Of a DNA stretch of 64,000 nucleotides, positions 2,427 through 56,268 are shown piece by piece. The notes under the pieces were generated by a model. The model saw nothing but the letters and a program-made list of their open reading frames with translations, was not told where the DNA came from and did not search any database. A program made the position numbers and the translations under genes. Origin of the DNA: Mizuhopecten yessoensis (Eukaryota). The stretch lies in the NCBI RefSeq assembly GCF_002113885.1, contig NW_018408848.1, positions 868,502 to 932,501 on the forward strand, written 5' to 3'. Positions within the stretch are counted from its first letter, which is position 1; each line of letters starts with the position of its first letter.

Positions 2427-4319
2427 GTCCTCATTGTGATCAAGCAGATGTCAGACTCCAATCGCTTGATCTAACAAATTCTATCCAAAATTAGGAGTTA
2501 CCTCCCGTTGAACGATACACACTATATAAGACTAAGACCACAATTAATTTTACTATATGTTTCATTGTAACATTTAATTTCATAACAAACTCCCAATATC
2601 CGATAGCCAACTTTCCATCTAACCTGGTCAAGAGCAACATCTTGGGAATAAAATATCAAATTTCAACATAGCATGTTGGCCTTTTTCTTGAGATAATCGT
2701 CTGCATGTGTCACCAATGTCAAAAATAAACATCCGGGTCAGGGGTAGAGGTAAACACAGGACTTTTCACGCAGCATCCTGCACCAAAAAATAAATGCACA
2801 ATACAAAAATTTGACACAGAAATTGTTAGATTGATATCTCCACAGTATTTTAGCACCAAAGTTTTACACAAACACCAAGTTCTAAGAGGCATAGTATAGT
2901 TTTTACTAAAGTACCTTTATTTCTAAGGGACTTAATTCGTGGGTACTGAACCAGGAAGCATTTAATTGTGACCTCAGTCCATATTGTGCTAAATTTGAAT
3001 TAAATTTAATATCTCAATATATTCGTTATTTTGCGTATTTAAAACTACAAACTTTCATTTAATTCATTCCACCGTGAGATGGGACTATTTTGTGTAAATT
3101 GGTATTAACTCTCCTTAACTTGTGTCAATTTAGATGAGTTCCATTTACGAAGCTTTTCCTTTGAAATCGATTGTTGTCAGATTAAATTCAAATTATTTTA
3201 ATACTTTAGGCCTTACGGCCCATATGTTCACATGCAAAATACAATTATTATCAATAACATGGCATCTATGGGAGGATGAGGTAGCTATACCTTTACAACA
3301 TATAGGAACAAAGGAACAAATACATCTAAATAGTGGTATGCTATATTCCAGGCACAGACTTATAAAATGAATATCTTTTACACGAAAATACATTATCATA
3401 GACGCGAGTGGCTACCCAGGGACTCCAGGTGGTTGGCCAATCTGTAAATCACTCAAGTCAACATATTAAATGGATGGAATAAGGTAAATTCAAATNCCCC
3501 CCCCCCCCCCCGACGAGGTTTCCATGGATATACCACTCAAGTCAACGTTATTGTAATGGAGAATAAACACTGGATTGAATTAAATTAATTATATATGCTA
3601 ATATTTCAAATTCTTCTTTTATAGATTTCCCCATACATTACATCATTACATCATTAAATTCATATAGAAATACCAGATAAGAGTATAGTATTACAAGTGC
3701 GGCAAATACTAGTCTCGTTCAACCAGACTCTTCAGATTCAGATTGTTTTATTCCTTGTGTAACACACATCGGAGAGTAGACATACAAATAGTACAGTATA
3801 TTACAAATTTACAATGATACATGGATACAATAATATTCATTAATCTTGCAGTACTTCAAAATGACATATAATAAGAGACAACATTTTACACTGCAATACA
3901 CCAACATCGTAAGGTTCCGATACAGTGCAAGCATAACAATAGTATAACTTTCAATGACGTACGTTACAGGTAATGATAACTGGATTAATATAGTTACATA
4001 CATTGTATCGCACATATGTCACGAATAAATACTCTCTAGTAGAACAGTAAAAAAAAACAATAAAATACACTGCCATAGTGTAATAAATACGATGTTACAC
4101 CTGACGTTAGTGACAGTGATATTACGATATAGAAAATACTCGTCGATGTTTCGAAGTTGTTAATTATGATTAATTTACCATATAATTTATATCACATAGG
4201 AAAGGAAATGAACGGGCACAATCACCTTTTTTTTTTCAACACAATATACACATAATACAAATATCTTATCAAATATGGTATACTGAAATGAACATTTACA
4301 GGAAAAATGAGATAAAATA

Positions 4320-7300
4320 TTATACAGTGTTATTACGACGTTTTAAACTTAAAAACAGGAATTTTCCTAATTTATTTAATTCCTTAATGTTTTGAGTAGT
4401 AAATAACTGTATCAATTTGAAAACACTTGGTCGTTTGTAATAAAAAGGCTTAATAAACTCGCGCCTTAAGTCGTTATAAAAGTTACACTTTAATATAAAA
4501 TGAAATTCGTCTTCAATATCATTAGAGTTACATAAGTTACAGAATCTTTGTTCTCTAGGAAGGTTTCTATATCTTCCCTGTTCAATATTTAAATTATGAG
4601 AGCTAAGTCTAAAGCGAGCTAAAGTCTTTTTATATGAATTATCAATTGGTTTTATTAAATATGATTGCAAAGAAAAATTGTCTATTAGATGTTGATAAAG
4701 GAATCCTTTCGGAGTTGTTTGGATATTAGTTAATATTTCCTGCCGGTAAAAGTCAAAAAGTCTTTGCTCAATGATTGTATAGATATTTCTATCATTTCTA
4801 ACATTTTCCCAAAGGTAAGTTAAACCTAATTTGTTGAGTTCTGTGCGGATATCAAGAATCCAATTATCATTTGATAAAATTCTTTCCTCGTAACATGTTT
4901 TTAAAATGCAATTATTCGAAGTTTTTAATTTTAACCAATATTTAAAAACTTTCAGTTTTCTACATACAGACAATGGTAATCTTCCTAACTCACAATAAAC
5001 TAAATTATTACACGTACTCTTCTTGACTCCGAGTAGCCTTTTACAGAAATGTAAGTGTATCTTTTCAACATCAAGAGCTTTATGAAAGCCCCATACTTCT
5101 GCACTGTAACTTAAGACGCTATTAATATAAGTGTCGAATACAGAACATTGTGTTTTGATATTAAAATTATGATTTTTGAACTTATTACAAAGCGCATAAT
5201 ATGCCTTATTACCCTGATCTGCAACATGCTTTTGAGTGACATAAAATTTACCATTGTAATTAAAGAGCATGCCTAAGTAATTAAACTGGTCGACGACTTG
5301 GAGCTCTTTAGTGTCGTAAAACCATTTTTCGTTGTTTCGTATCCCGCCACCATTCCTGAAAACTACTATTTTCGTCTTATCAGTGTTCAAATTGAGTTTG
5401 TACTTGTTATTATATGATTTCAGAGCTTCCAGAATATGTTGTAACTTTTCTGGCGTTTCTGCAAATAGCACCGTATCGTCAGCATACATTAAAAGAAAAA
5501 TGTTAATTAAATTAATTTCAATAGATGGACAACCTTCTTTTATAAAATGAATTTCACAGTCATTGACGAACATGGAGTATAAAATGGGTGACAAAATTTC
5601 ACCCTGAAATAGACCGATTGTATTTGAAAAAAAATCTGAATACAAACCATTGTGCTTTACACATGACTTAACTGAACTATACAACGATTGAATTATACGT
5701 AACATTTTCCCTCTAACACCCTGCTTAATCAATTTGCACCACATATGAGATCTGTCGATTAAGTCAAAAGCTTTCTTGTAATCAACAAAGCAACAGTAAA
5801 GTCTACCACCTTTTTTACTTAAATATCTATTAATTAAAGTCTGAAGTACAAATATTGCATCAACGGTTGAATGTCCGGGTCTAAAACCAAATTGAGCATC
5901 TGTTATTACATTATTTTTAACATCCCAATTAACTAGTCGCTCATTCAAAATGGAGGTAAACAACTTCCCCATGCAACTGACTAGAGTAATGCCCCTGTAA
6001 TTATTTGTATTTTCTATATCGCCTTTCTTATATACGGGGGTAATACTCCCAGTAGACCAAGCTTCAGGGAAAATCCCTAATTGAAAAATATAATTAAAAA
6101 GTTTGATTAAATATGGAACAAGTATATCATTGCAATCAATAAAAAGTTCATTAAGCATTTTGTCCTCACCACAACTTTTATTTCTACTTAACTTATGTAT
6201 TGCAGAAATAACTTCTTTTTCTGTGATATGGGAGTCGAGTTCTTCAAATACACATGATATATTATTTTCATCTAAAGTTGTTTCGCCTATCTCGTGAACT
6301 GGATTACCTTGACAACTTAAATCTTTAAAATGATTGTAGAATTTGTCAAGAGAAATTTTGTTAGAAACTTTAAATTTTCGTTTCGAAAAGTATTTATAAA
6401 AATGTTTCGGGTTGTGTTTTCTAAGATACTCCATCATATCTCCCTCCTGTCGCTGATATTCTCTCTTCAGTCTTAACTCAAATTTCTTATAATCAGTTTT
6501 TTTCTCAATTAATATTCTATGATTATCAGCAGTTTTAAAATTGTTAAATGTATGTAAGGCATCTTTGTATATCTTATATATCTGCTTACATGGAAGATTA
6601 AACCAGGGTTTATCCTCATGCTGAATACTTTTTTTCTTTGAGACATTATCAGTTATAGTTGACTTACATCTATGTACATCACACAGTGGTAAACACATCT
6701 CATTTAGAAAAGAACAAAGTTTGTCAACACATAATTCGACATCTGACTTGTTTAACAAAGGTGTAACGAGGAGTTCACTTAATACATTGATATTTTGACT
6801 AAGATTCTGTCTAATGGAGTTTACATTATCATCATTCCACTTTACATTTTCACAAACGCATCTAGCATGAGCTTGATTTCCAGGTAAATCTTCATCAAAA
6901 TGTATATCTAATCTCAATTTAAAAGATAAAGGTGAGTGATCAGACATAGTTACAAAATTACCAGACTTAAATTCTTTTACATTTTGAAAATTGTCCCCCT
7001 CAACTAAAAGGTAATCTATAAGGCTTGTACCAATAGAACTAAAGAAAGTAACACTTCCATCCGGGTCACCTGAGTGACGTCCGTTCAATATCCTAAAACT
7101 AGTAGATTTGCACAGAGACAATAACTTTCTTCCAAAAGAGTTTACAGATTTGTCCATGCTTTTCCGCTCAGTAAGATCATACACACTGTCAGATTGATAG
7201 TCAACAGCATCAAATAATACATTACCATCTTTACCCAATCCATCATTAATTATCATATCAGGTCTGGTACCAGTTCTGGCATTGAAATCTCCAGTTATGT

Positions 7301-7763
7301 ACACTTTACCATTTGATCTATAATTTATAATGGAATCTTGCAAAGTTTGAAATAAATCTATTTCTTCTGTGTTATTTTCATAGAAAACACTTTTTTCGGG
7401 GGGAAAGTAACAAAACACAATGTAGCTATAACTTAAATTTCCTTCAAGTTTTAACCATATTATGCTATCGTGAATATTTTCAACTATCGATATATTGTTT
7501 TTTAAGCAGTTTTTATAGAATATAACAATACCCCCACCGATACCAGTTTTCCTCGGGAAGACATATTTACAATAACCATCTAACTCAAATTCATCTTTCT
7601 CAGATCACCAACATTCACTGAGACACGCAATGTCATAATTGTTGATAATATCTAGAAAGTCTCTATTACAGACCTTTCCTAATAGGCCTTTACCAATGCT
7701 CCACGACAGTACCAACAGGTCTCGCTCAGCCGTATACGGTTGCGCGTCACTCTCCGCGTGATC
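4320..7763 (-). CDS. LINE A ORF2: AP endonuclease + reverse transcriptase + C-terminal Cys/His motif; one in-frame TGA at 7605-7607
   Basis: The 1032-aa ORF (4320-7418) has GDFNA, IDY, SDH, QFGFR, FVDYKKAFD, QGEILSP, YADD. The frame extends 115 codons upstream to the ORF1 stop and encodes the APE N-terminus (LLVLSWSIGKG..DIACLSECW*..GGGIVIFYK). Confidence 0.9.
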
Positions 7764-8997
7764 CTATGCACGATGATCCTCCCAAGGCCGCTGGGGGCCC
7801 CTGTTGTTGGACTGTGGATTCGCCGAAGTGGCAGGTCTGTTCATCGCGCGAGGCTGGGTTGGTGGTGAATATCTCTGACGCGGAGCAGCAGTAGGCTGTT
7901 GACGTCCTCTGTCAGGTGCTGAGATGGACCGTGTGTCCGCCTGTCCTGTAGAAAATCCACTTGATCTGCTGGTATGCTGGTTTGCGCGTTTGTTAACATA
8001 ACTGGCCTGGTCGCTGTGGGTGATCCCTGGTTGTTCCTCGTATAGCCTACCGTCTATGTACAGCCTGTCTCGGATCAGTTTTGCGGTGTTCCCAGCTTGT
8101 TTGCTACGTTTGAGGACTGGATACAACCTTTTCCTTCTTTCCTCTATTTCTGCCGGATACTGTTCATGAATGCCAAACATGGTCCCTTTCAGATGGAATG
8201 ACCTGCTTTTGACCAGTTGGAGATCTTGGTTGTACACGAATCTGGCAACAATCGGTCGGGGCTTGCCACGTATGTGCCTACCAAACCTATGGACGTTGAC
8301 AAAGTCAATCCTATGCTCAATACCAAGTTCTATATATATGAAGTCCCTGATGAGAGCCAAGGTATCCTCATTGCGGTTTTCCCCTGAAAGTCCGGTGAAA
8401 ACAAGGTTGTATTTCATAGACCTGCACTGTAGATCTAGAACAGTCTGTTTCATATTGTCGCGGTCCAGTCTGAGTGTATCAAAATCACTACAAAGTCCAC
8501 TGATGACTGCCTCCTGTTCTTTTACTGCCTCTGACAACTCCTGGTAACTAACCAAATTGGCACTGAGTTCGTCATACTGGTCCGATACAAAATTAGCTGT
8601 AGATTGGAAATCTCCACACTTCCGTTCGGCATCTGAAACACGTCTCTCAACCTCATTTACTCTGATAGTTAAACGAGAAAGATGTTCTTCAATCGTATCT
8701 AGCTTGTCTAGCTTCTCCATTTTGCTGAGTATAAAGTCAAGTTTACGGTTTGTTTCGTCGTGAAACTGATAATGACATTCGATTTCATCCTTGACTCTAA
8801 AGGTCGGTTTCGGAGTCGAAGATGGGGGGATAGGGGCCTGCTTGGTAGTGCTGCCGTACAGTACACCACTCACAGCGTTCAGTATGCTACTCACAGTCGT
8901 TCAGTATGCTACTCACAGTACCTATAGAGTTGTTACTGCTCTCGCTTTGATCTCCATCTTCTGTATCCTTCTTCTTCCTTTTCTTGCTCTTCCCCAT
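7764..8997 (-). CDS. LINE A ORF1 (coiled coil + RRM-like nucleic-acid-binding protein), frameshifted by a 22-bp duplication
   Basis: 376-aa ORF with heptad region and NLVFTGL..HRFG..PRPIVARF; ATG at 8997 (MGKSKKRKKK) joins in frame if one copy of the 8876-8919 duplication is removed (403 aa). Confidence 0.85.
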
Positions 8998-11185
8998 GTT
9001 TACACAGTTGACGTTCCAGAGGTAAGTAAAATCTCACAAACACTATAAATAGTTATGTCGCGGCTATCTACACAATCTAACAGTAGCGCGTCGATGAAGC
9101 GTGACAGATTTTCGGCCGTGCGTCGTGACGTGTCTCAGAACAGGTGAGCATCGGGGTCATGGTTCAGAACGTTCACTATATATATATATAGGCGATATAA
9201 TAAACACAGCACCCAATATAACAAAGGTACATAAGTCACAAAATAAATCACGGATACAGCTACATGCTTACGTAGTAACAACCTGCCGCCGTCTTCTGTC
9301 CAAAATAAATGTCAGAAATCATCATGAAAAGGCACAAATAATGTCGAAGAATACGGAGCTCATCCAACCTGGACACTAATGGGCGTCGCCAGTACTGTAA
9401 AATCACGGATTCGTGACTGATTACCACTGTTAAACTATAGGTGTCTCGGTACAAATTACACACTTAGTACCTCTCACGTTGATACACGCTGTTAGCATCT
9501 TGTCTCAATCTTGTTGCCTGCGCAAGCTACGCCGAATCTTGAATTACAAGTGATCAAACGTCTGGTTGAACGAGACTAGGCAAATACCAGTACTGGATAT
9601 GTCGTACAGAAATATATGATTTAAGAAAACTTACGGAATTAATTCAATTTTAGTTTATTAGCCTCGTATACAAAGTTACCTAACATACATAGTTCCTTGG
9701 TATTTTCAACACTCAACAACTGTATAAGTTTATACACTGATGGATTTGTCCAGTAGTAAAAAAAAATTGAAGCGTTTTCTTAAATTATTGTATGCATTGC
9801 ATTTCAAAATAAAGTGGTATTCATCTTCTATGTCGTTTAAATCACAAAATATGCAGAGTCTAACATTTCTGGCTATATTTCTGTGTCTTCCTGTCTCGAT
9901 TGCTAAAGTATGGACAGACAAGCGTAATTTTGTTAAAAAAAATCTATACTTCATAGGAATATACTTGCTTAAATAATATTGAATCGAAAAATGATTTACA
10001 ATATGCTAATATAAAAGGCACTTAGACGACGACTCTAACAGACTCCTTAAGTCTTGCAGTGCATGGTCGAATATTCTTTGACCTATCAGCTTTATGACAT
10101 TTTTGTATTTAATTGTCGATTGCCTCAACCATATGTCGCCGAAACCCAGTTCGAAAAGTAACTGCTTGACTTGGTTTACCCAGTTAAAGCATGTGCCAGT
10201 ATTGTTGCCTAATAAGAGTGTATATGCACTTTTTACAATACCATTTTTTGAATCAAGTAATTTAAACCAGAATTTTATCATTTGATATTTCCGTAAGTAT
10301 TCTAGAGGATAACACCCGAGTTCAAAGTATATCATTGCACTACTAATAGATTTATTTTACTTTCATGATCTGTTTACAAAAATGTAAGTGCACTTTTTCA
10401 ATGTCTAGACATTTACTTGCTCCCCATACTTCACTGACATAAAACAATATACTGTTTACATAAGTGTCAAATAGGTTTAACAAAGTTTTCACAATAAGAT
10501 TCAATGTTGAACATTTTTAGAATAAGGCAAACATAGCTTTCGCCCTTGTTCCGACAATTGTTTTTGCATGCAACTAAATTTATTATTGAAATTACAATGT
10601 AAATATGTTCTCGACTATTTCGACAACTTCACCATTTAGGTACTACAGTTCATTATTTCTCACCTTTCCGCCTCTACGGAACAACACAATCTTTGTTTTG
10701 TCTGTGATAATGGTCAGATTCTATTTCTTTGAATAATCTGCTAGATTATCGAGTAATTCTTGCAATCCTTCAATAGATTCAGAAAATGGCACCAAGTCGT
10801 CCACACATCGCATTAAAAGCAGACTCAGTTCTTCAAATTCATAGTGATTTTTACATTTGGAGATAAAAAAACGATTCAAAGTCGTTATTATACATAGAAA
10901 CATTTCGCCTTGAATTAAACCGACAGTATTGTCAAAGAAGTCCGACAAACTTCCTTTGAACTTGACACAAGATTTAACTTTAGTATATATAGACTTAATT
11001 ACATTAAACGTTTGCCTCTAACCCCTAGCTTGGACAATTTGTACCACAGATTCATTCTATCAACATAGTCAAAAGCCTTTCAGAAATCAACGAAACAACA
11101 ATAATTCGTCCGGGGCGAAATCCAAATTGAGCATCGGTTTTTACGTCATATGTTTCTGATTATGACATGCATCGTATACCATATA

Positions 11186-13305
11186 CCAAGACTGTCCTAT
11201 TACGGTGTATGAGATAGCTAAAGCGATAGGTAACATGAAACGGGGTAAATCACATGGACTTGATGGAATTTTAAATGAATGTATCGTATTTGGTAAAAAT
11301 GTACTATTGCCTGTTTTGAGTGTACTATTTAATGGCATTTTTAATTCTGGATGTTTTCCGTCCGAATGGTCTATAGCTGTTATTACGCCAGTTCATAAGA
11401 AAGGAGATAAAAGTGACCCTAATAATTTTAGAGGTATTAGTTTGGTAAGTTGTCTAGGCAAACTGTTTACATCAATTTTGAATACGAGGTTGGTAAAATG
11501 GTGTCTTATGATAATATTACTGACGCACAGTTTGGTTTTCGCCCTGGTCTTAGCACTGTTGATGCCGTTTTCGCTCTGCATTCAGTTATTACAAAATCTT
11601 TTAGCGAAAATAAAAAGCTATATTGCTGTTTCGTGGATTTTAGAAAGGCGTTCGACTACGTTGATAGGATCAACTTGCGGTATAAGTTATCGAAGTTGGG
11701 AGTAAGAGGGAAGCTGCTGCAAGTCATCAAGTCTATATATAATCATGTTAGGTCTTGTGTAAAATTCAAAGGCTGCTTATCAGACTTTTTTGATAATGAT
11801 ATCGGATTATTGCAAGGAGAAATTCTGTCTCCGATACTTTTTTTCCATGTATGTGAATGATTTTGAATCGTTTTTTTATCTCGAATTGTAGTAGCTATTA
11901 TACCTTTGGAGAATTAAGCTATACGCAGACGATTTAGTGTTGTTATCGGAGACGGTTGAGGGTTTACAGGAACTGTTGGATAATCTCCCTAGTTATTCTG
12001 AGAAATGGAAATTAACTGTCAATATTGACAAGACAAAAATTGTGTTTTTTTTCGAAAAGGCGGGAAAGTTCGAAATAATGAAATTTGGTTTTATGATGGC
12101 AAGACGGTTAGTTGTGTTGATCAATTTACATACCTAGATGTGCAATGTAAGTTTAACAATAAGTTCAATAGTATTCAGAAACAATTAGCTGACCAAGGTC
12201 GTAAAGCTATGTTTGCTTTATTATCAAAATGCTCCAACCTTAGTCTTAATTTTAAGACCATGTTACATTTGTTTGATACCTATGTTATTAGCATATTAAG
12301 TTACGCATGTGAAGTATGGGGATCCACAAAAGGAATAGACATTGAGAATGTGCACTTGAATTTCTGTAAGAGACTCCTCAAAGTTAAAAAAATCCAACTG
12401 TAATGCAATGGTATATATCGAACTTGGTCGCTTGCCTTTAGAATGTATCAGAAAATACAGAATCATTGGTTTAAGTTACTCGACTCGAAAAATTGTATTC
12501 TGAACTGTGCATATTCTTTTTTCATCAAAACAGATTACATGTTATTGCTTTAACTGGGTACACCATGTAAAAAATGAATTATTTGCTTTGGGCTTTGGTG
12601 ATGTATGGTTAAGCCAATCGTCGACTAATGTTAAATTAATTTTACCGCTTATTCGTCAAAGATTTTTTGACCAAGGTCAACAACATTTAAGAGGTTTACT
12701 AGAGACTTCCTCCAAGTGTTTTTTTATACAAGTGTATTGNGTCAAAGAATTTTTGACCAAGGCCAACAACATTTAAGAGGTTTACTAGAGACTTCCTCTA
12801 AGTGTTTTTTATACAAGTGTATCGTAGACCACTTTTCCATTCAGTATTATTTAACCAAATATATTCCTAAGAATTATAGAATTAGTCTAACAAAGTTACG
12901 AATGTCTGCACATTCATTAGCAATCGAGACCGGTAGATATCGCAACGTTATTCGAGAACAGAGATATTGTACGAACTGTAATTCGGCTACAGAAGTCGAA
13001 GATGAATACCATTTTATTCTGATATGTAAAACCTACCAAAACTTAAGAAGTCGCCTTATTAAAAAGTACTATTGGAAAAAGCCATCCATGTTTAAATTTA
13101 TACAATTATTGTGTGTTAACAATACTAAGGAATTATGTCAACTTGGTAAATATATTTTTGAAGCTAATAAGTTAAGAATCTAATTTATTTACTCCACTCT
13201 CTCAATGTGTATTGTGAGCCGTGTTATTGTGTATATTATGCATTGTATTGATATGTTTGTACTGATCGGCCGTAAGGCCGAAAGTTAATAAATGAATTGA
13301 ATTGA
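11186..13305 (+). mobile_element. LINE C: decayed 5'-truncated RTE-X-like LINE
   Basis: Frameshifted RT ORFs 11205-13183; hairpin TCGGCC-GTAA-GGCCGA 13266-13281, AATAAA, (TTGAA)n tail; TSD ATATA at 11181-11185/13306-13310. Confidence 0.88.
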
Positions 13306-13380
13306 ATATATCTTTTAACTTAATTTTATTACGTAACAGGATGAACTGGTCTTACCAGGTCGGACACTGCATTCAGTCTC

Positions 13381-13418
13381 TATTCAATTAATTCAATTAG
13401 TTTATTCTGTAGGCCTTA
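13381..13418 (-). mobile_element. 38-bp extreme 5'-truncated LINE 3' end
   Basis: Absent from the paralog (30238/30239 junction); minus strand reads AAGGCCTA-CAG-AATAAA-..TTGAATTAATTGAATA. Confidence 0.7.
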
Positions 13419-13728
13419 GACAAAGGACAGCTAAATTGGCTTACCTGGTCGGGTACGGCTGTTACGGCACGATTTCTCACCCCGACACGATTTCTCAATA
13501 ACATACGGCCTTGGCCATAGAGATTAAGAACAAGTTCATCTGAACTTTTGTAAGAAATTATTAAAAGTAAAAGAGTCATCAAATGATAATATGATATGTT
13601 CTGAATTGGGACGCTTTCCGTTAGAGGTTATCAGAAAATTTAGAAGGATAAAATATTGGTTTAAAATTTTACATTGTGAAAATTGTATTGTCACCAATAG
13701 TTATGATTTTCTAATGCTGGTGTGGTGG

Positions 13729-16464
13729 TTTCAAGATTTGTATTAACACTCAGACACATAATATGTGTTACATGAGGAAATAAAGTTGCAGAGGTGGAAA
13801 ATGAAGTACAATATACATATTTGTAGAACTGAAAGAATGGACAGTTCAATTTATAGCCGATACGGTATAGTAACATGTTGTGACATACAATGGAAATTAC
13901 AAAGCAAACATAAATAAACATACATTTAATTCACAAGTTATCTAACTATTAACAGTTATACATATGCATCATTCACAAAAGAGGAGCCGTTTTGATTAGG
14001 AAAATAGATAAACTTGTCAGAACTCGTTGATTGCATAATGATAAAAGACCTTTAAACTTGTAAATATTTGGGTTTGTACAATATATTTGTTACGTAAGGT
14101 GGATATAGTTATATTATTGCATTCAAATGGATAATGAAATTCATCCCCGACACTTACCGCGCACAAATTACATAGTCGATTATCTCGGGGTATGTTATAC
14201 CATCTACCTGTTTCAATCGGAAACTTTAAATTCGAAGTGCGCAGTTTTGTTATTGGTGTTCTGATATGTTCTGGCAAATTTAATAAATATCTTTCTAGAC
14301 TAAATTCCGTTTTAAATGTACTGCCCACTAGATGAGCTAGTAATGTCATCGAACCATTGCCGTACAAAGTGATCAATAAGCCTTTGTTTTAAAATGCATT
14401 TGTAAAATCCATCAGGCGTGTGTAATTTATTATCAAGTATGTAAGAAAAACCCGTTTCGTTAAAGATACATGTACCTTTTATATGGTTAATCCATTTGAA
14501 CGGAAGAGTATCATTGTTTTGCATATGTAAAGCCAGTCGTAGTAATATACTGCTGAGTTTGTTTTCATTACTAATTATTCTATTCCAAAAACCTAACATT
14601 CTTAGTTTAACATTTATTTCCAAGTTTTCAAGTTTTATTTTTACACTCACGCCACACATATACGTGCGTAACAAGAGGTCACATAATACATAATATACAT
14701 TGATGGACATAATACTCACATAATATGACACATGATACAATTCATACAATAACAACCCATTTCAATAATTCATTTAGCTAAATTCTTTTAGATATTAAGT
14801 AGCTTCATTACTCTTTGTATAAATGTACTTACTTTTGTTAAGAGTACAGTGTTACAAATTGAGAACATTCCTTTCATTTTGATATAAGTTGGGTTGACAT
14901 AATAATAATTTGGTACATAAAGTTGTCTAAGAGCTACAACAGATACATTAGTACATTGGTATAAGTAGTGGTATTCGTCCCCAACACAGTTATTACATAG
15001 GGGACATAACCTTTCCTCGCGTGGGACTCCATTCCATCTTCCTGTTTCTATAGGAAATTTTATATTTGATGTTCTAAATTTACATATTACTTTTCGTTCA
15101 TTACGATTTAGCTTTAAAAGATATGGTTCAATATTAAACTGAAATTTGAATAAGGAGTAAACTTGCCCTCGCGAGGAGGTTTCAACATCATGAAACCAAC
15201 TTTGAATGAATTGATCGCATAATCTCTGCTTAATGATATTTTTCAAGCATTGTCTATTAATTGTACATGATATTTGGAAAGTCCATAAATTATTAAATCC
15301 AGTATTGTTTAAGATATCTCGTATATACGTTAACCATTTAAAACTTAATAAAGAATTCTGGTGCAAATTGTACATTAACTTATACATTACACTAGATAAT
15401 TTCGATCCACCCGTTATAAGCTTATGCCAGAACATAACCATTCTAACACTGATTTCAATTTCTAGGGGATACCTTCCTAACTCACCATATACCATATAAT
15501 TTGGGGTGCTCTTCCGAATGTTAAGAATTTCCTTACAAAACTGTAAGTGTATTTTTTCGATACTTTTTGTATTTTCATAGCCCCAGATTTCACATCCATA
15601 TAATAAAATTGGTGACACAAGTGCATCAAATAATTTCAGTTGAAGATCTACAGGAATGGAAATATTTCTAATCTTAATATACAATGCATATAAAGCTTTT
15701 TTTGCTTGCTCTGTTAGTTTACTTTTGGCTTTTGTAAAAACACCATTGTAGTTTAATAGTATTCCAAGATATGTGTACGAATCTTGTATTTCTAAAATCT
15801 CATTATTAAACGTAAATTGATGGTCTCTTTTACTTTTTCTTTTTTCAAAAGTCAAAACTTTAGTTTTTTGGGTATTAACTGTTAATTTCCATATATTACA
15901 ATAATTTTGGAATTCATTCAATGCGTTTTGTAGGCCATCTGGTGTTTCTGACAAAAGCACTGTATCATCAGCATATAATATAATAAACAATTTTAAGTAC
16001 AAACCTAAATTTTGATCACTAAGAGCATACACTTCATTCAAACAAGAAACATTACGTTGATTGAGGAAATCCTCTAAATCGTTAAGAAAGAGGGAAAACA
16101 AAAATGGCGATAAGTTTTCTCCTTGTTTTACCCCGACATTGCACATGAAAAAGTCGGATGGCACACGACCTAGCTCGCCATAAATCATAAAATGAGGCAA
16201 TGTAGATCTCACTTTAAGAATTCTTTTATAAAACTTAAGATGAATCTGTTCGATAATTTTCAGGTTTTCGAATCCCCTTACATCCGATCCATATAGTAGA
16301 ATCGTTTTCACTAAAGAATCAAATAATTTTAATTGTAAATTTAAAGGAAGAGAAAGGTTCCTGATTTTTTTGTAAATAGCAAATATTGACTTTTGGGCCT
16401 GGTTGATCAATCTGCGTCTTGCTTTTACAAAATTGCCATTGTAATTAAATGTTATTCCTGAGTA
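13729..16464 (-). mobile_element. LINE D: decayed RTE-X-like fragment (13729-14623 + 16159-16464), split by LINE E
   Basis: YGELGRVP (ends 16159) continues as LEINVKLRMLGFW (from 14623); C-terminal IETGRW..CNLC..GDEFHY; CTTGAA tail at ~13730. Confidence 0.82.
14621..16158 (-). mobile_element. LINE E: young 5'-truncated RTE-X-like LINE with uninterrupted ORF2 C-terminal half
   Basis: Open frame SDFFMCNVGVKQGENLSP..YADD..CPLCNNCVGDEYHY to stop at 14788; AATAAA + AACTTGAAAACTTG tail. Confidence 0.88.
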
Positions 16465-18433
16465 TTCATGGCTATAGAGGCTGGAAGGTATAGAAATGTG
16501 CCTCAGGAGCAACGACATTGTAGAGAATGTAACTCCACTGATGTAAAAGATGAATACGATTTTTTATTGATCTGCAGTAAATTCAAAAATCTTAGAGAAC
16601 GGTTTATTAAGAAATTTTATTGGAAAAATCCCTGTCTTTAAAGCTATTCAATTGTGAAGTGTCCAAAATTGTAAAGCGTTATGTATGCTAAAAAAATATA
16701 TGTTTGAAGCAAACAAATTAAGAAACCCTTATTTTTTTCACATGTCAATATCCACTGTATTTATATCAGAGAATCGTGTATATATATTATGCACGGATTC
16801 TAAGGCCTAACGTATGAATAAAAACTTGAAACTTGAATCGTGGGGGCAATTAAACGGACATCGGTGCCGAGTTCTGTATTATAATACGTATAGTAATACG
16901 TTCTGACTTGCTATTTTAACTTCTGTTTATGACTTGATCAATATAAATTGTATCGATTATGATTTTTTTATGAGTTTTAGTGTCTCATAAGCCAACCAAT
17001 AATGGCTGGGTATTGATCGCTTTTTACTTTGTACATTTTATAATTGTGATTTGTATTTTACTGTCGATCAATGCGTGACACTTTAATAAACTATTATTTA
17101 TTAATTATTTATCATTGCTATAAATGATAGATGTCACTCAAACTAATTACTTAATTGTTATCGTGTAAATGTACTTAACAACATGCTTATATTTGTGATA
17201 TCAGTTAATTAAGACCTAGGTCTCGGACTGTATGGGTGTGGTTTTGGATACTCTAGAAATCACCCATCGATCAAGAGAAAGTTATTCTAATAAATTTATA
17301 CTTAGACCATATTCATTATCTCCAAAACTTTTACTTTTCAAATTGTATAACAACACCCTACACAATTGTTGTGTTAATACAATGTATCAACATTATCCTG
17401 ATGTATTGTATTGTAAGATGGACGTCACACACAATGTTTAATCTCAGGTTTTCTCTATATCCCATAAAACCCATAAAACATGTAAAATTACTCTGAACAC
17501 CTTAGTTTAGGTCCACATATAGCTGTAACAAATGTTCAGGTCCCTGTGATCAGATACTGTAATTGAACGTTACAATTTGGTTATTGATATAGTATGCCAA
17601 GCATGAATCACACTACATCTAATATCGTGCTGAGTCACCTTAAAATCTTTAGACATGTTTCAATTTTTGACTATCTGTGCGAGTAACTCCCCTTTATGGT
17701 CACACGTCAATTTGAAATTATTTCAAAATCGATATGGCGTACTTTGATTGAAATAACGAAACACATCCGAGAATAAAATTGTATAAAATTGTTTAATGCA
17801 GAACGTGGCGTACACAGATCTTTTATGAGCTAGGTTATGACAAGATACCCAAAATCATTTGTTTTGAAATAAATATGAAACAATGTGCGTAGAAATAAAT
17901 TTTGGAAAACAATATCTATTTTCCACATTTGTTTATTGATATCAAGATATCTAGATTGTGTATGACCAGTCAGATGCCGACCTCCGTAAACATTACAACA
18001 GACATGAATACTTACAGGATCAGGGCGTTTCAATCACTATTGACTTGTAAGATATGCATAGTTCATTGCTATAGTGACTCGCGTTGATCGAAAAACATTT
18101 TGGTTCAACTGACAATTAAGTGTTTGTGATAAAGAAGATAATTTGGACATAATGCTATAGTATGTTACAGAACGACAGAACTTTTCTTGCTGTGCACTAA
18201 CAAGCTTGTTCAGTGAATATTCCGGGATGTACGTGGCCAATCAAACACGTCTACTGTATTGACCCTGTACCAGCTTACTGTGTCAAACAAATGTATCTAT
18301 ATATATTTGCACTCTATCGTCTAGTGTAGGTATAACAACTGTATAATAATGGAACTTCCTTTATGAATTAGTAACGTCTTTATATGTGTATTAAAACAAC
18401 AAAAAGACGATATGTTTATATGAAAACAACAGA

Positions 18434-29400: not shown

Positions 29401-32400
29401 ACTTACAGAAACAGTTCATGTTATGTTTCATAACTAAAGCGTCGTCCAATTCCGTATCGTTGAGATAAACAACGGGGATTTAGGTAAGATTTTGCATTAA
29501 GCCTTTCACCTGTATATGTATATGCGCTAATGCCGTGTAACGATATATTGTGTATAGTAAGTCCAAACTTAAAACCAGGTAATCCTTGGATTAGTTCAAA
29601 CATAAATGTTCTATAGAGGTAAACACACTGATTATTATATTTTGTAACACAAGCATGTTTAACATTATTAATTGGTTACCTTTCCGGACTATAACGAGCA
29701 TCACCACCGTCTAACTGTAACCCAACTTCAACATGCAATACTTTACAATGAAAAAATTGAGTCACTGATATTTTGAAGCTTTTAAGAAGACACATACTGT
29801 CCTGGGTTAAAACGGATAGTATTAGATAGGCAGTTTGTTATACTTTATTATAAAAAAATGTGAAAAGTATTAACTTCATATATGTACATTGGATGAAACT
29901 ATCATAAAGAATTTTATGATAAAAGTGCTAAATTTGAACTTTGAATTAATATATCATTACATGTATATTCGTTATTTTGCGTATTTTAACCTACAAACTT
30001 TTATTTAATCTATACCATCGTGTGACATAAATATAATTAATATCCTGGAACTATTTGTGTAAATTGTTTGTATTTAACTTGTGTCATTTTAGATAAGTTC
30101 TATTTATGAAGCTATTCCTTTCAAGTCGACATGCGTCATTGTTGTCATATTAACTCATGCATTTACTTTGTCCATCTTATACCATATATCTTTCAACTTA
30201 ATTATATTACGTAAGAGGATTAACTTGCATTCAGTCTCAGACAAAGGACAGCTAAATTGGCTTACCTGGTCAGGTACGGCCGAAGTCTGAAAGGCCGATT
30301 GCTATGAATGACAGATGTCACTCAAACTGATTACTTAATTGCTATATATTGTGTAAATGTACTTAGGACACGATTATGATTTGTAACTTCAGTTAGGAGC
30401 AAGGCATCGGACTGTACGGGTGTGTTTTTGGATACTCAGGAAATCACCCACCGACCTAGATAAAGTTATTCTAATAAATTTATATTTGGACCATACCACA
30501 TCTCCAGAAACTTTTACTTTTCAAATTGTATAACAATACCCCACAAAAGTGTTGTTATAAAACTATCGATTCTAGATCTGGAGGGAACAGACTATATAAT
30601 ATTAAGACGTTTCCTTGTTAATTTCTCTTCGAGTTGCTATCTTCAATGGTATCAATCATACGATAAGTTGTCACACGACTTTGTGTTTATATTATATATA
30701 CATATGCTTATAATTACAATAATAAATCATCTAAGTTATACAAAAAAGTTCAGTGACCTTTGGCGTCTGAAGTCCCCATAGCACTTGTAATATAATCTTA
30801 TTATCAGTGGCTAACGGCTCGTGTATATTTAGACCACTTATTCTGAAAAGCCCTGTCCTTATCGATGCGGCAGTGGTATCTGCATCAACGATTCTGTACA
30901 ACAACAAGAGTATAATACACAGAAAAAAACATGACCCCCGATTCGTGTCTAAACAGTGTCAGTACAACTTGAACAGCTTTTCCAGAGATCAAATCAGATA
31001 TCAATGGATGTAAGAATACGCTGTCAGATGAGTTTCCATATCTAATATGAACATTGTTCGGTTGGGTAATTATTCATCATATTTTGAATAAGTATTCAAA
31101 TAAATGGTCCTAGTGGGGGATTAGGTACGAGTTAAGTACGGTAAGTAAAAAATTATGAAACGCTGCTTACTTTTGGCGGTCAAACGTATTTCAATATTCT
31201 TCATGGTACCCTATCTAAGCTTGATTTATTTAGTTTTTTCTTTATTTTCTGTTTACAATTATAGTTATCTTTGGTCTATCCGGCATATACCTGTGACGTA
31301 TTGTTATCTATGTCTTAGTTTGGGGTCTGAATTTGACGAGAGACACGACTAACGCCAGGTAGAGCGCCTGGTTGATGATGTCTCTGCTTCAGGTGTTTAT
31401 ACTGGTTAGACTTGTTCATTATTTCGACAACGGTAGTCACAGCATGTTACAGGAAAAACCGAATATGTTTTAATGTTTGAACCGTTCGTTACTGATGCGT
31501 GGAAGATACGGATTACGCTTCAATAGTTTTTGTCTTTTGAATTCGTTGGCGACGAATATCAGAAGAGAAACAATAGGACGGAAAGCTATAGAAAAAAAGT
31601 AAAGGATAAATATATAAGTATTGTAACGATGGCTGCAACGTATTGTTTTTGTATCTGTCCTATCCAAATATTGTCATGGTGAGTGTAACTCATTGTTAAT
31701 GGTGTGTCTGATCACGAATATCATTATGGTAATATGGCGTTGTTCTTCTGTATGTTGTTGGAGTTTCCGATATGCCCTCAACAGAGAACAAAGATTGCAG
31801 CTCTGGTAATGTATGGAGAAAAAAACATATCGGTGTGTCAGTTTTTGTAACTTAGGTAGAATAGACAATAATGCCATTATTGTACTGCTTGTGTTCTACG
31901 TAAACCTTCATGCTGTTTTTAGAAATATAATCACAACATCATATAAATAACTGGAAAGACATAACCGTATCTTGCGTCGCATCTTTAAAGGTGTGTTTTT
32001 TCGTAGGCATGGGTGTTTAAAATATTTGCAAATTATTGCAATGCACCATTCGGAAGCATTAACAAAACCGCGTTAAATGAACTCCGGTATAAAAAATGCA
32101 AAAAAGCCGCATTTTTGTAGATAGTTGGTGTAGTCATGACAACCAACAATCTCCCCACACGGAATGCTAGCGGTTATATTGATATCATAGTGAACATTTA
32201 AATGACACCGTCTAGAGGCGACACACTGGTGAATTGTTTGTAGTAGCCACAATATGGGCGGTAAATGGCATGCGTTTTATATCAATCCAATTTATCAGAT
32301 CCGATATTAATGACAGGTCAAACAGGGGTCAAACCGATATCATGTCATGACGTAACTTCCGTTACGGAGTATCATGTAACCGTATATCAGTTAATGTATA

Positions 32401-49344: not shown

Positions 49345-50260
49345 TCAGGATCCAGACAACAGAGTTCAGGATACAATTGTAACACGCATCAGACAAACAG
49401 TTATGCATAGTCGAAATATGATCTAAACACCAGGGTCCAGGATACAAATAAATCAAGCATCATACAACAGGGTCCAGGATACAAATAAATCAAGCATCAT
49501 ACAACAGGATCAAAAATACAGTTGTATCAAGCATCAGACACCAGGGTCAAAGATACAAATGAATCAAGGCATCAGACACCAGGGTCAAGGATACCGTTGT
49601 ATCAAGCATCAGACAATACGGTCAAATATACAAATGAATCAAGGCATTAGACACCAGGGTCTAGAATACAGATAAATCAAGAATCATACAACAGGATTAA
49701 GGATACAGTTGAATCAAGCATCATACAACAGGGTCAATGATACATATGAATCAAGCATCAGACACCAGGGTCAAGGATACAGTTGTATTAAGCATCAGGT
49801 CAAGGATGCAGTTGTACCAAGCATCAGACACCAGGGTCTAGAATACAGATAAATCAAGAATCATACAACAGGGTTAAGGATACAGTTGAATCAAGCATCA
49901 TACAACAGGGTCAATGATACATATGAATCAAGCATCATACAACAGGGTCAATGATACAGTTGAATCAAGCATCAGACACCAGGGTCAAGGAAACAGTTGA
50001 ATCAAGCATCAGACACCAGGGTCAAGGAAACAGTTGAATCAAGCATCAGACAAAAGGGGGTCAAGGATACAGTTGAATCAAGCATAGGAAAAACGAGTCC
50101 AGGATACAGATGAATTAAGCATCAGAAAAGGGAATCCAGGATACAATTTGTTCAAGCAGCAGAGAAAAGGGTCCAGGATCTAGTTGTATTAAGCATCACA
50201 CAACAGAATCATTGATACACCTACGTGATACATCATAGAAGAAGGTCCAGTATACAGTTG
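49345..50260. repeat. 37-bp minisatellite, ~24 copies
   Basis: Consensus CACCAGGGTCAAGGATACAGTTGAATCAAGCATCAGA; e.g. starts at 49977 and 50014. Confidence 0.92.
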
Positions 50261-51662: not shown

Positions 51663-53387
51663 AACAAGAGGCCCAGAGGGCCTGTATCGCTCACCTGGAT
51701 ACCTAGGCAATCATGGCAAACTATTCTCCAAATGAGATCTAGGGAATATGCCAGACCCCAAGGCCAATCCTTGTAGCATAGCTATATTAGATTTTTCATG
51801 CCCAGCAATTTTATGTATGGTTATGGGGTGGGGATCTCAACTGTTTCCAGGCTTTGACTCAGAAACTAGGTCCCTAGAGTTGTGGCCAGACCCCAGGATC
51901 GATTCTAATATCGTGACTGCATTTGTCTCTTTTTGCCAAGCATTTGTATATATAGTTTTGGGGTGGGGATCTCAACCGTTTCAAAGTTATGACCCAGGGG
52001 CCAAGTCTGCAAGGGTGGGGCAGACCCTGGGATCAATTCTAATGTCATGACTGCATTCGTCTCTTTATGCCCAACAATTGTATATATAGTTTTGGGGTGG
52101 GGATATTAACCATTTCAAAGTTATGACCCAGGGGTTAAGTCTCCAAGGGTGGGGCAGTCCCCAAGGCCAACCTGGAAGCATATGTGCAATCATCTCTTTA
52201 TACTCAGCAATTGTATATATACGGTTATAGGGTGGGGCTCTCAACTGTTTCCAAGCTGTGACTAAGAAACTAGGTCCCTAGGGGTTCGGTCAGACCCCAG
52301 GGTCTATTCTGATATCATGATTGCATTCGTCTCTTTATGCCCAGCATTTGTATATATAGTTTTGGGGTGGGGATCTCAACCGTTTTAAAGTTATGGCCCA
52401 GGGACTATGTCTCCAAGGGTGGGGCCAGACCCTAGGGACATCCTGGAAGCAAATGTGCATTCTTCTCTTTATACTCAGCAATTGTATATATGGTTATATG
52501 GTGGGGATCTCAACCATTTCCAAGTAATACATTTTATTGGCCCCACCCCTTAGCCCGGGGGGTCAGCCCCACCATTTGTACAATTTTGAATCCCTGCCTC
52601 CCATGAATACTTCCGACCAAATATGATCAATATCCATGGCATAGTTCTGCAGAAGAAGTCATTTATAGCAATATAACCAAATTGCCCCCTTTTGGCCCCG
52701 CCCCTCAGCCCCCTGGGGGGTCAGCCCAACCGTTTGTACAATTTTGAATCTCCACCACCTAGAGATGCTTCCAGTCAAATAAGGTTGATATCCATCACTT
52801 AGTTCCAGAGAAGAAGTCACTTAAAGCAGTATAGCCAAATACCCTTTTTGGCCCTGCCCCTCAGCCCCCTGGGGGGTCAGCCACACCATTTGTACAATTT
52901 TAAATCCCTGCCTCCCAGGAATGCTTTTGATCAAATATGATTGATATCCAGTGCACAGTTCTACAGAAGAAGTCGTTTGTAGCAATATAGCCAAATTGCC
53001 CCCTTTTGGCCCCGCCCCTTAGCCCCCTGGGGAGTCAGCCCCACCATTTGTACAATTTTTAATCACCACCACCTAGGGATGCTTCCAGTCAAATATGGTT
53101 GATATCCACTTCTTAGTTCCAGAGAAGAAGTCGCTTAAAGCAGTATAGCCAAATACCCTTTTTGGCCCTGCCCCTCAGCCCCCTGGGGGGTCAGCCCCAC
53201 CATTTGTACAATTTTGAATCCCCACCACCTAAGGATGCTTCCATTTAAATTTAGTTTAATTCCAACCAGTGGTTAAGAAGAAGAAGTCGTTTAAAGAAAT
53301 TGTTGACGTACGGACGGACGGACGGACGACGGACGCCACGGTATGGCATAAGCTCACCTTGGTCCTTCGGACCAGGTGAGCTAAAAA
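51663..53387 (-). mobile_element. Non-autonomous Helentron/HINE (pearl/DINE-1-type) element with internal tandem arrays
   Basis: AACAAGAGGCCC..GGGCC..GCTCACCTG at one end; (GACG)n microsatellite and AGCTCACCT-TGGTCC-TTC-GGACCA-GGTGAGCT palindrome plus A-run at the other; ~135-bp x6 and ~157-bp x5 arrays. Confidence 0.85.
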
Positions 53388-56018: not shown

Positions 56019-56268
56019 TTTCTGGTGACATTCTGCAATGAAGACAAATCACATATGTACTTTCTGGTGACATTCTGCAATGTATCACATATGTACTTCC
56101 TGGTGACATTCTGCAATGAAGACATATCACATATGTACATTTCTGGTGACATTCTGCAATGAAGACATATCACATATGTACTTTCTGGTGACATTCTACA
56201 ATGAAGACAAATCACATATGTACTTTCTGGTGACATTCTGCAATGAAGACAAATCACATATGTACTTT
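56019..56268. repeat. 42-bp tandem repeat, 6 copies
   Basis: TTTCTGGTGACATTCTGCAATGAAGACAAATCACATATGTAC. Confidence 0.92.

What the first reader, a model, noticed from the sequence alone, without database searches (positions are those of the whole stretch)
2986..17376. Retrotransposon sink: a ~630-bp repeat hit four times within ~130 bp and inflated to 14.4 kb, with the empty paralog 13 kb away
Seen: five fragments reassemble colinearly into the sequence at 29925-30556. The insertion points map to ~30152 (LINE B), ~30188 (LINE C), 30238 (38-bp tail) and ~30280 (element G). Secondary insertions nest further (B>MITE>A and G>F>D>E) in both orientations and at different decay levels. No comparable RT-bearing LINE was recognised in the other ~47 kb. 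Known: APE-type LINEs are usually only weakly site-specific, and piRNA clusters accumulate nested TE fragments. Inference: either RTE-X-like LINEs home to this repeat and to each other (a self-reinforcing safe haven), or this is a small dual-strand piRNA-source trap.
Basis: partly seen in the sequence, partly recalled or inferred. Interest (0 to 1): 0.8.

Follow-up and report, generated by a model that had tools for sequence, protein, structure and literature searches.

The report
LINE pile-up in old solo LTR
An old solo LTR in what is probably a bivalve genome was split by four separate LINE insertions, which were then hit again, giving a 14.4-kb transposon nest; this is an ordinary kind of structure, but there is a hint that the middle of this LTR attracts LINE insertions.

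Summary
Window 2986-17379 is one copy of a 669-bp repeat cut into five colinear pieces by four direct insertions: LINE B, LINE C, a 37-bp LINE tail, and G. Three of the four insertions have target-site duplications. Secondary nests B>MITE>A and G>F>D are confirmed. Element "E" was not found, and "G" is two elements sharing one duplication.

The host repeat is the LTR of a roughly 2.5-kb gag-only LTR retrotransposon with at least 262 candidate copies. The "empty paralog" is therefore an independent, younger solo LTR.

Family-level homing is not supported. Junction-spanning searches found no second LINE-LTR junction for three LINE families (192, 374 and 169 first-look candidates; the best 40 of each were scored). 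D elsewhere is not inside F, and A elsewhere is not inside the MITE.

The piRNA idea could not be tested because no small-RNA library was offered. Two raw RNA-seq runs gave zero reads on the unique old parts.

One result remains unexplained. Three different hairpin-tailed LINE families inserted within 7 bp, in the same orientation, in three independent LTR copies (p about 0.01). Six of eight breakpoints in other copies fall in the same central 170 bp.

My verdict is passive accumulation with weak target preference. A real LTR landing pad remains a live rival. The scan had already noted 3701-9587 as a possible composite element; my checks argue against that reading.

The parts
2986..3185 (+). 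Solo-LTR fragment F1 (consensus 26-248). The first 25 bp of the LTR are missing.
3186..3708 (-). LINE B, 3' UTR and tail. It has a GGCC-GTAA-GGCC hairpin, an AATAAA-like signal and a GAATT tail next to F1. It is old: at most 86% identical to 28 genomic relatives.
3709..3730 (.). Left end of a hAT-like MITE: 19-20-bp terminal inverted repeat, with 8-bp duplication GCAAATAC at 3701-3708 and 9580-9587.
3731..9391 (-). LINE A, full length at 5.66 kb and 94-99% identical to other copies. ORF1 is 7764-8894 (376 aa, coiled-coil-like). ORF2 is 4320-7763 (APE+RT) with one in-frame stop at 7605-7607.
9392..9579 (.). Right part of the hAT-like MITE. Its terminal 70 bp is abundant in the genome at 87-98% identity.
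9580..11144 (-). LINE B, 5'-truncated coding part (RT and C-terminal region, matching aa 541-1022 of A's ORF2).
11145..11185 (+). Solo-LTR fragment F2 (consensus about 230-284). It overlaps F1 (B's duplication) and F3 (C's duplication).
11186..13305 (+). LINE C, 5'-truncated and young: 98% identical over its last 246 bp to about 40 scored copies out of 180 candidates. Same hairpin and (GAATT)n tail as B. The 86-bp duplication around the N at 12740 is probably an assembly artefact.
13306..13380 (+). Solo-LTR fragment F3 (consensus 279-353).
13381..13417 (-). 37-bp extreme 5'-truncated LINE tail: half a hairpin, an AATAAA-like signal and AATTGAATT repeats when read on the minus strand.
   Evidence: reads from other LTR copies skip exactly 13381-13417 (table 5)
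13418..13478 (+). Solo-LTR fragment F4 (consensus 354-418).
13479..13731 (+). LINE G1, 5' piece (matching RT aa 783-844). Old and single-copy.
   Evidence: (X15 contig 13468-13767 at depth about 10 bridges the G1|F junction)
13732..14620 (-). LINE F, 3' part, 86-91% identical to genomic copies (673 candidates).
14621..16160 (-). LINE D, 5'-truncated and young: mostly 94-99% identical to other copies. It sits inside F.
   Evidence: (joint 14622/16158 in X15)
16161..16465 (-). LINE F, 5' part. The 576-aa ORF 14788-16518 is a chance in-frame fusion across the F|D junction.
16466..16840 (+). LINE G1, 3' piece, ending in AATAAAA(ACTTGAA)2.
16841..17113 (+). G2, a separate short retroelement family. 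Genomic hits start uniformly near 16849. G2 shares one 6-bp duplication with G1.
   Evidence: (X15 contig 16714-17022 bridges G1|G2)
17114..17379 (+). Solo-LTR fragment F5 (consensus 413-669).
29900..30559 (+). Independent, uninterrupted solo LTR of the same family: 96% identical to the consensus, with 4-bp duplication AAAC. It lacks 22 bp of the consensus.

Best explanation
An old solo LTR of a small gag-only LTR retrotransposon family received non-LTR retrotransposon insertions over a long period. It is about 11% diverged from its family consensus, roughly three times more than the uninterrupted copy 12.5 kb away.

Four target-primed reverse-transcription events hit the LTR itself: B, C, a 37-bp tail, and the G1+G2 composite. 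Four more transposon insertions (three LINEs and one MITE) landed in the newcomers: a hAT-like MITE in B's 3' UTR, LINE A in that MITE, F in G1, and D in F.

The LINEs are several families of one clade. They have an APE+RT ORF2, and their 3' ends carry an AATAAA-like signal (in B and C preceded by a short GGCC hairpin) followed by a short tandem-repeat tail. They insert at many places in the genome.

The clustering is best read as neutral accumulation at a dispensable, old site. The weak preferences of APE-type endonucleases, for TA-rich patches and microhomology to the tail, probably helped. It does not need sequence-specific homing or a dedicated trap.

Shown here: the anatomy, the duplications, the ages, and the absence of family-level homing. 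Inferred: the neutrality of the site and the endonuclease preference.
For: - **Colinear fragments and duplications:**
- **LTR nature of the host:** paired copies 1884 bp apart, 4-bp duplications, a TGG-type primer-binding site and a polypurine tract, and a 384-aa ORF with a weak zinc-knuckle hit.
- **Staggered ages, so not one burst:** B at most 86% identical to relatives, F 86-91%, G1 and G2 at most 90%, C 98%, D mostly 94-99%, A up to 99%.
- **The host copy is old:** about 89% identical to the consensus, against a mean of 97% for 49 other LTR alignments.
- **No family-level homing:**
- **No similarity between LINE 3' ends and the LTR:**
- **No Pol III cassette in the LTR:**
- **No notable DNA structure in the LTR centre:** z = -1.6.
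- **Microhomology:** the L035 family's own 3' end shares 8 nt with the LTR site.
Against: - The age-scaled expectation for this copy is only 0.5-0.7 insertions, against 4 observed (P 0.002-0.006).
- Three different LINE families hit cons 272-279 in the same orientation in three independent LTR copies (p about 0.01).
- Breakpoints in other copies cluster in the same central region (p 0.005-0.014).

These small-sample signals point to something beyond uniform random insertion.
Confidence: 0.5

Rival explanations
1. The centre of this LTR is a real landing pad for the hairpin-tailed LINE clade. The candidate features are a TATA-like alternating patch at cons 272-284 and its neighbourhood. The cause would be intrinsic DNA features recognised by the endonuclease, or open chromatin at the LTR promoter in germ cells. 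Old solo LTRs would then be hit repeatedly and grow into LINE nests. This preference would act at the level of the site. It is not family-wide homing, because each LINE family places under 1% of its copies there.
For: - Three independent insertions from three families lie at cons 272, 274 and 279, all in the same orientation. The simulated chance of such a triple among 10 junctions is about 0.01.
- Six of eight breakpoints in other copies lie within the region defined beforehand by the nest.
- The hairpin-tail motif count is 2 in about 25 kb of other LTR copies against 0 in about 250 kb of non-LTR DNA.
- The nest has 4 hits against 0.5-0.7 expected.
- The LTR family is transcribed: many X21 reads continue from 13459 into intact-LTR sequence (table 7).
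Against: - The numbers are small.
- Only the 40 best of 262 candidate LTR copies were scored, which may favour centrally split copies.
- Nothing places the three sites at one phosphodiester bond, and the ten target sites share no motif.
- C entered long after B had already cut the LTR's upstream half away, so promoter activity is an unlikely cause for C.
- No background LINE density could be measured genome-wide.
Confidence: 0.3
2. The nest is a small piRNA-source locus (a trap). Its mixed-orientation LINE fragments would be transcribed into precursors that silence the active families A, C and D.
For: The nest holds fragments of at least seven LINE families in both orientations, including close relatives of currently abundant young families. 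This is the composition seen in known piRNA clusters, which I state from general knowledge.
Against: - RNA depth was zero on the unique old segments 13512-13712, 13914-14516 and 16326-17100 in two raw RNA-seq runs, each sampled to about 1.7-1.9 billion letters. The 13713-13913 bin had only trace depth (0.25, one run, one strand).
- The reads that did map carry the signatures of other copies, shown by loose ends and skipped insertions.
- The nest is only 14.4 kb, and no other RT-bearing LINE lies in the remaining 47 kb.
- The tissue of the runs is unknown, and no small-RNA library was offered. This is therefore weak evidence.
Confidence: 0.07
3. The structure is an assembly artefact: a short-read scaffold chained repeats together wrongly.
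For: The assembly is fragmented (82659 contigs). Single-N joints sit at 3496 and 12740. An 86-bp duplication flanking the N at 12740 is skipped by contigs of two other runs.
Against: - The five LTR pieces are colinear, and their overlaps behave as target-site duplications.
- The MITE has a perfect 8-bp duplication.
- Single-copy-depth contigs of run X15 bridge the G1|F and G1|G2 junctions (table 8). X15 may be the assembly's own sample.
Confidence: 0.03

Closest known systems
Nested transposon clusters, such as the layered retrotransposon nests between maize genes and the TE nests of Drosophila heterochromatin (general knowledge)
   Same: Successive insertions into earlier insertions, with mixed orientations, mixed ages, and duplications preserved at each layer.
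   Different: Here the base layer is a 669-bp solo LTR hit four times directly within about 165 bp. The inserting elements are almost all non-LTR elements of one clade.
Site-specific or self-targeting LINEs: R1/R2 in rDNA, Tx1L in Tx1D, Zepp nesting in Chlorella, Dictyostelium TRE near tRNA genes (general knowledge)
   Same: Repeated LINE insertion into another repeat. Three families use the same 7-bp stretch of the LTR.
   Different: In those systems most copies of a family sit at the target. Here junction-spanning searches found no second LINE-LTR junction among 192, 374 and 169 candidates (best 40 scored), and the LTR carries no Pol III gene.
Stringent-type LINEs with a 3' stem-loop and short tandem-repeat tail, such as eel UnaL2 of the L2 clade (general knowledge); bivalve RTE-X, Proto2 and CR1-Zenon lineages (PMC10294476)
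   Same: APE+RT ORF2. B and C carry a hairpin, an AATAAA-like signal and a 5-nt repeat tail; A, D and G1 have the signal and 6-7-nt repeat tails but no hairpin was shown for them. Heavy 5' truncation. A's length of 5.66 kb falls within the range reported for the bivalve lineages.
   Different: Clade membership was not tested, because no reference RT set was available.
piRNA clusters such as Drosophila flamenco and 42AB (general knowledge)
   Same: Dense fragments of many transposon families in both orientations.
   Different: The nest is small (14.4 kb) and isolated, no precursor transcript was seen, and small RNAs were not examined.
Non-autonomous LTR retrotransposons and their solo LTRs (TRIM- or LARD-like elements, gag-only elements)
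   Same: 669-bp direct LTRs flank 1235 bp of internal sequence. There are 4-bp duplications, a TGG primer-binding site, a polypurine tract and many solo copies.
   Different: The LTR termini read TAT...ATA rather than TG...CA. The internal region is one 384-aa ORF with only a weak zinc-knuckle hit.

Membership tests
Solo LTR of an LTR retrotransposon | The same repeat occurs as two direct copies flanking an internal region elsewhere in the genome. | tested here: met
   Five loci have copies 1851-1906 bp apart (1884 bp in three). L041 holds a full element.
Solo LTR of an LTR retrotransposon | A short target-site duplication flanks both solo copies and full elements. | tested here: met
   4-bp duplications: AAAC in the window copy, and GATC, GTAA, GCTA, GTAC and others at solo copies; CTAC and ATAG flank full elements. 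For the nest copy itself this cannot be checked, because its first 25 bp are missing.
Solo LTR of an LTR retrotransposon | A primer-binding site lies after the 5' LTR and a polypurine tract before the 3' LTR. | tested here: met
   TTGGTGGA follows the 5' LTR and GGAGGGAAAT precedes the 3' LTR in several elements. No tRNA match was sought.
Solo LTR of an LTR retrotransposon | TG...CA termini. | tested here: not met
   The consensus begins TATCAT and ends GTTATA. This departs from the rule but not from the other features.
APE-type non-LTR retrotransposon (LINE) | A reverse transcriptase domain, with an apurinic-like endonuclease upstream in the same ORF. | tested here: met
   RVT_1 E = 7e-36. 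Exo_endo_phos_2 scored 22.6 bits, below its cut-off of 27.4. Homologues carry PF03372 or PF14529.
APE-type non-LTR retrotransposon (LINE) | Variable 5' truncation, a fixed 3' end and target-site duplications. | tested here: met
   B, C, D, F, G1 and the 37-bp tail are all 3'-anchored. Duplications are seen for B, C and G.
RTE-X clade | Placement of the RT domain inside the RTE-X clade in a phylogeny with reference elements. | not testable with these tools
   No reference LINE protein set is available. Named homologues are lacking, and only one hit carries a name, from Pinctada imbricata.
Site-specific (homing) LINE | Most or many copies of the family sit at the same target sequence. | tested here: not met
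   In junction-spanning searches only the query locus itself spanned the LINE-LTR junction, for families with 192, 374 and 169 candidates (best 40 scored). None of 29 fetched C copies is flanked by the LTR.
piRNA cluster | Uniquely mapping 24-31-nt small RNAs with 1U bias and a ping-pong signature. | not testable with these tools
   No small-RNA library was among the 24 runs offered.
piRNA cluster | A long precursor transcript across the locus. | tested here: not met
   Depth was zero on the unique segments in two raw RNA-seq runs, apart from one trace bin (0.25 at 13713-13913). The tissue is unknown, so this is a weak test.
hAT-type MITE | Terminal inverted repeats and an 8-bp target-site duplication. 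| tested here: met
   20-nt perfect inverted repeat at 3709-3728 and 9560-9579. GCAAATAC lies on both sides. The end piece is abundant in the genome.

The most novel reading that the evidence does not exclude
The central part of this LTR family would be a preferred landing pad for several families of hairpin-tailed LINEs. The candidate features are a TATA-like patch at consensus 272-284 and the roughly 150 bp around it. Dispensable solo LTRs would then act as self-enlarging sinks that absorb LINE insertions in a bivalve genome. This would be a site-level preference without family-wide site specificity.
Probability: 0.25. Interest if true: 0.55.

Novelty: new member of a known kind. Interest (0 to 1): 0.3.

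Why it matters
As it stands, this is a well-resolved example of a layered transposon nest in an understudied animal genome. It is useful mainly as annotation. It defines a gag-only LTR family, about nine LINE or short retroelement families with their 3' ends, and a hAT-like MITE.

If the hinted preference of these LINEs for the centre of the LTR is real, it would show something further. It would show how weakly specific endonuclease-type LINEs can still concentrate in harmless places, which bears on how genomes tolerate active retrotransposons.

The test needs only a whole-genome breakpoint map for one LTR family.

Tried and rejected
- **Pol III cassette in the LTR.** Earlier notes on this genome describe tRNA- or 5S-like LTRs. 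Rfam at permissive E-values and ARAGORN found none inside the element. The only tRNA-like hit lies in the flank of L041.
- **Homology between LINE 3' ends and the LTR as a targeting mechanism.** Local alignments of nine tails to both strands of the consensus scored no better than shuffles.
- **Hairpin or cruciform in the LTR centre.** The DNA fold gave z = -1.6, which is unremarkable.
- **The element's internal region as a same-age control for insertion density.** Only 31 candidates exist and most are near-identical, so this was too few to use.
- **A nick-site motif from truncated C-family copies.** No clear duplications or motif emerged.
- **Repeat content of the rest of the window, measured against all fetched loci.** The sample was too small: only the nest and the second LTR matched.
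- **RNA evidence for a precursor.** Reads on the nest come from other copies, and the unique parts had none. This was my slip, and the call ran.
- **Other notes on hotspots or sinks in this scan.** A word search of earlier findings returned nothing.
- **Fetching flanks of B-, D-, F- and G-family copies.** Only coordinates were available after that.

Full report
**Observation.**
A BLAST of 29700-30800 against the window recovers 2986-3185, 13415-13459 and 17114-17383. A short-word search adds 11170-11185, 13306-13347 and 13368-13380.

I built a 669-bp consensus from 24 genomic copies. Against it the interrupted copy resolves into five colinear pieces:

| Piece | Window coordinates | Consensus positions |
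|---|---|---|
| F1 | 2986-3185 | 26-248 |
| F2 | about 11145-11185 | 230-284 |
| F3 | 13306-13380 | 279-353 |
| F4 | 13418-13478 | 354-418 |
| F5 | 17114-17379 | 413-669 |

It is not an insertion in the nest.

The overlaps F1/F2, F2/F3 and F4/F5 behave as target-site duplications of about 15-19, 5-6 and 6 bp. The LTR therefore took four direct, separate hits, at cons 248, 279-284, 353/354 and 413-418. All RT-like matches in the window lie within 4323-16638.

**What the host repeat is.**
The own-genome search found 262 candidates. Several pairs lie 1851-1906 bp apart, most at 1884 bp, in the same orientation. Alignment of flanks extends the repeat 25 bp to the left. It also shows 4-bp duplications at solo copies and at full elements, TTGGTGGA just after the 5' copy and GGAGGGAAAT just before the 3' copy.

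The 1235-bp interior is one 384-aa ORF with a weak zinc-knuckle hit. Four full elements are identical over it. The repeat is therefore the LTR of a small, recently active, gag-only LTR retrotransposon, and both window copies are solo LTRs.

The copy at 29900-30559 has its own duplication (AAAC) and is 96% identical to the consensus. The nest copy is about 89% identical. They are independent insertions of different age. They are not a filled and an empty version of one site.

**The inserted elements.**
- **LINE A (3731-9391, minus strand)** is full length and 94-99% identical to other copies. One of those copies spans the same 5.65 kb on contig C4538. It has a 376-aa ORF1 and an APE+RT ORF2. 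ORF2 carries one in-frame stop at 7605-7607, so the '1032-aa intact ORF' is only the part downstream of that stop.
- **The MITE.** A sits 2 bp inside the left end of a roughly 220-bp hAT-like MITE (3709-3730 plus 9392-9579). The MITE has a 20-nt perfect terminal inverted repeat and an 8-bp duplication.
- **LINE B (3186-3708 plus 9580-11144, minus strand)** holds the MITE in its 3' UTR. B is old: at most 86% identical to 28 candidates. Its continuity is supported by relatives on C5445 and C3489.
- **LINE C (11186-13305, plus strand)** is 98% identical to many copies. B and C share a GGCC-GTAA-GGCC hairpin, an AATAAA-like signal and a (GAATT)n tail.
- **The 37-bp insert (13381-13417)** is the reverse complement of such a tail. 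Reads from other LTR copies skip exactly those 37 bp.
- **G is two families**. G1 is 13479-13731 plus 16466-16840 and ends in (ACTTGAA)2. G2 is 16841-17113. One duplication encloses both, so either one inserted at the edge of the other or they arrived as one template-switch chimera. I could not tell which.
- **F and D.** F (13732-14620 plus 16161-16465, minus strand, 86-91% identical to relatives) sits in G1. D (14621-16160, minus strand, mostly 94-99%) sits in F. A contig of run X15 joins 14622 to 16158, which is F without D.
- **No element 'E'.** I found no separate E. The 576-aa ORF at 14788-16518 reads across the F|D junction by chance.

The closest named homologue of A's ORF2 is from the pearl oyster Pinctada imbricata. 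An assembly of 988 Mb matches the top of the range quoted for scallop genomes (PMC12121003). From memory, and unverified, these statistics fit the Yesso scallop assembly.

**Tests of homing.**
- None of 29 other fetched C-family copies is followed by LTR sequence, and their flanks are all different.
- Queries spanning a LINE tail plus the adjoining LTR should rank any second such junction first. They returned only themselves for the C family (192 first-look candidates, best 40 scored), the L036 family (374) and the L035 family (169).
- All other D copies end at D's own borders and do not continue into F.
- All other A copies end at A's own ends and do not continue into the MITE.

No LINE family here is site-specific for the LTR or for another LINE.

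**What remains odd.**
Other LTR copies also carry insertions, most of them retroelements:

| Locus | Position (consensus) | Inserted sequence |
|---|---|---|
| L031 | 503-508 | 104 bp, retroelement tail |
| L032 | 398-403 | 144 bp, a D-like tail |
| L033 | 384-386 | 662 bp |
| L034 | 318-342 | 346 bp, GC-rich, not a LINE |
| L035 | 274 | LINE tail |
| L036 | 272/273 | 627-bp LINE with ORF |
| L038 | 336 | LINE tail |

- **A recurrent site.** C in the nest, L035 and L036 are different families in independent loci. Their 3' junctions are at cons 279, 274 and 272, all in the LTR's orientation. Among ten junctions placed at random, a same-strand triple within 7 bp arises in about 1% of simulations.
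- **Central clustering.** Six of eight breakpoints in other copies fall inside cons 248-418, the region the nest defines (p 0.005, or 0.014 if the ends are undetectable).
- **Motif contrast.** A regular expression for the hairpin tail finds it in the nest (B and C), in L035 and L036, and in the loci fetched with C's own tail.
- **Age-scaled expectation.** Scaling the insertion count in other copies by substitutions gives 0.5-0.7 expected hits for the nest copy, against 4 observed (P 0.002-0.006).

There are caveats. Only the 40 best of 262 candidates were scored, the samples are tiny, and I could not measure the genome-wide LINE density. The scan also reads many windows, so a rare pile-up will be met somewhere.

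The L035 family's own 3' end shares 8 nt (ATACCATA) with the LTR site. This suggests microhomology-guided priming for that event.

I found no common motif at the ten sites, no LINE-LTR similarity, no Pol III gene and no marked structure.

**piRNA reading.**
No small-RNA run was offered. I laid two raw RNA-seq runs, one RNA contig set and one probable DNA contig set on 11100-17100.

Depth appears only on the young multicopy parts and on LTR pieces. Loose ends and skipped insertions show those reads come from other copies. The unique old segments 13512-13712, 13914-14516 and 16326-17100 have zero RNA reads in both raw runs. The 13713-13913 bin has only trace depth (0.25 in one run, one strand).

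This gives no support for a precursor transcript. The tissues are unknown, so it is not a refutation.

Single-copy-depth contigs of X15 bridge the G1|F and G1|G2 junctions, which speaks for the assembly. The 86-bp duplication at the N of 12740 is skipped by other runs' contigs and is probably an artefact.

**Verdict.**
The locus is a real, well-layered transposon nest built on an old solo LTR over a long time. Its kind is well known.

A weaker reading, that the middle of this LTR is a preferred landing site for one LINE clade, is suggested at about the 1% level by several small and partly dependent samples. It deserves the simple genome-wide test described under next steps.

No N was filled.

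Noticed in passing
L041:1011-3543 (G000:C5415:1026310-1028842): Full copy of the host element: two 669-bp LTRs around a 1235-bp interior. The interior is almost entirely one 384-aa ORF with a weak zinc-knuckle hit. Four genomic copies are identical over the interior, so this gag-only element looks recently active.
   Followed up: partly
window 7605-7607: A single in-frame stop lies in the endonuclease part of LINE A's ORF2. ORF1 and ORF2 are in the same frame, separated by the stop at 7764-7766.
   Followed up: yes
window 12650-12822: An 86-bp tandem duplication flanks the single N at 12740 inside LINE C. Contigs of two other runs skip it, so it is probably an assembly artefact.
   Followed up: partly
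window 14788-16518: The 576-aa open frame with an RT hit is a chance in-frame fusion of LINE F and LINE D across their junction at 16160/16161. It is not a gene.
   Followed up: yes
window 13473-13478 and 17114-17119, enclosing 13479-17113: G1 (with F and D inside it) and the unrelated short element G2 lie between one pair of 6-bp duplications. This may be a template-switch chimera, or an insertion exactly at a tail-target junction.
   Followed up: no
L034:1806-2151 (G000:C4071): A 346-bp GC-rich insert in another LTR copy is flanked by a 22-25-bp duplication of cons 318-342. The same 22 bp are deleted in the window's intact LTR (29900-30559). This may be an indel-prone spot.
   Followed up: no
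L035:2030-2045 and about 30 other genomic copies: This LINE family's own 3' end runs 8 nt (ATACCATA) into what looks like LTR sequence. The junction with the LTR at cons 274 therefore has 8-nt microhomology.
   Followed up: partly
No other genomic copy of the LINE continues into the MITE ends, so it is not a mobile composite.
   Followed up: yes
window 49427-50206, 51798-53300, 56018-56269, 689-945: Several tandem arrays with periods of 37 (also 187 and 401), 134 (also 270), 156 (also 314), 42 and 57 bp. I did not examine them.
   Followed up: no
window 60092-60523 (minus strand): An open frame with three Kelch repeats (E = 3e-44), probably an exon of a Kelch-repeat gene about 43 kb from the nest.
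   Followed up: no
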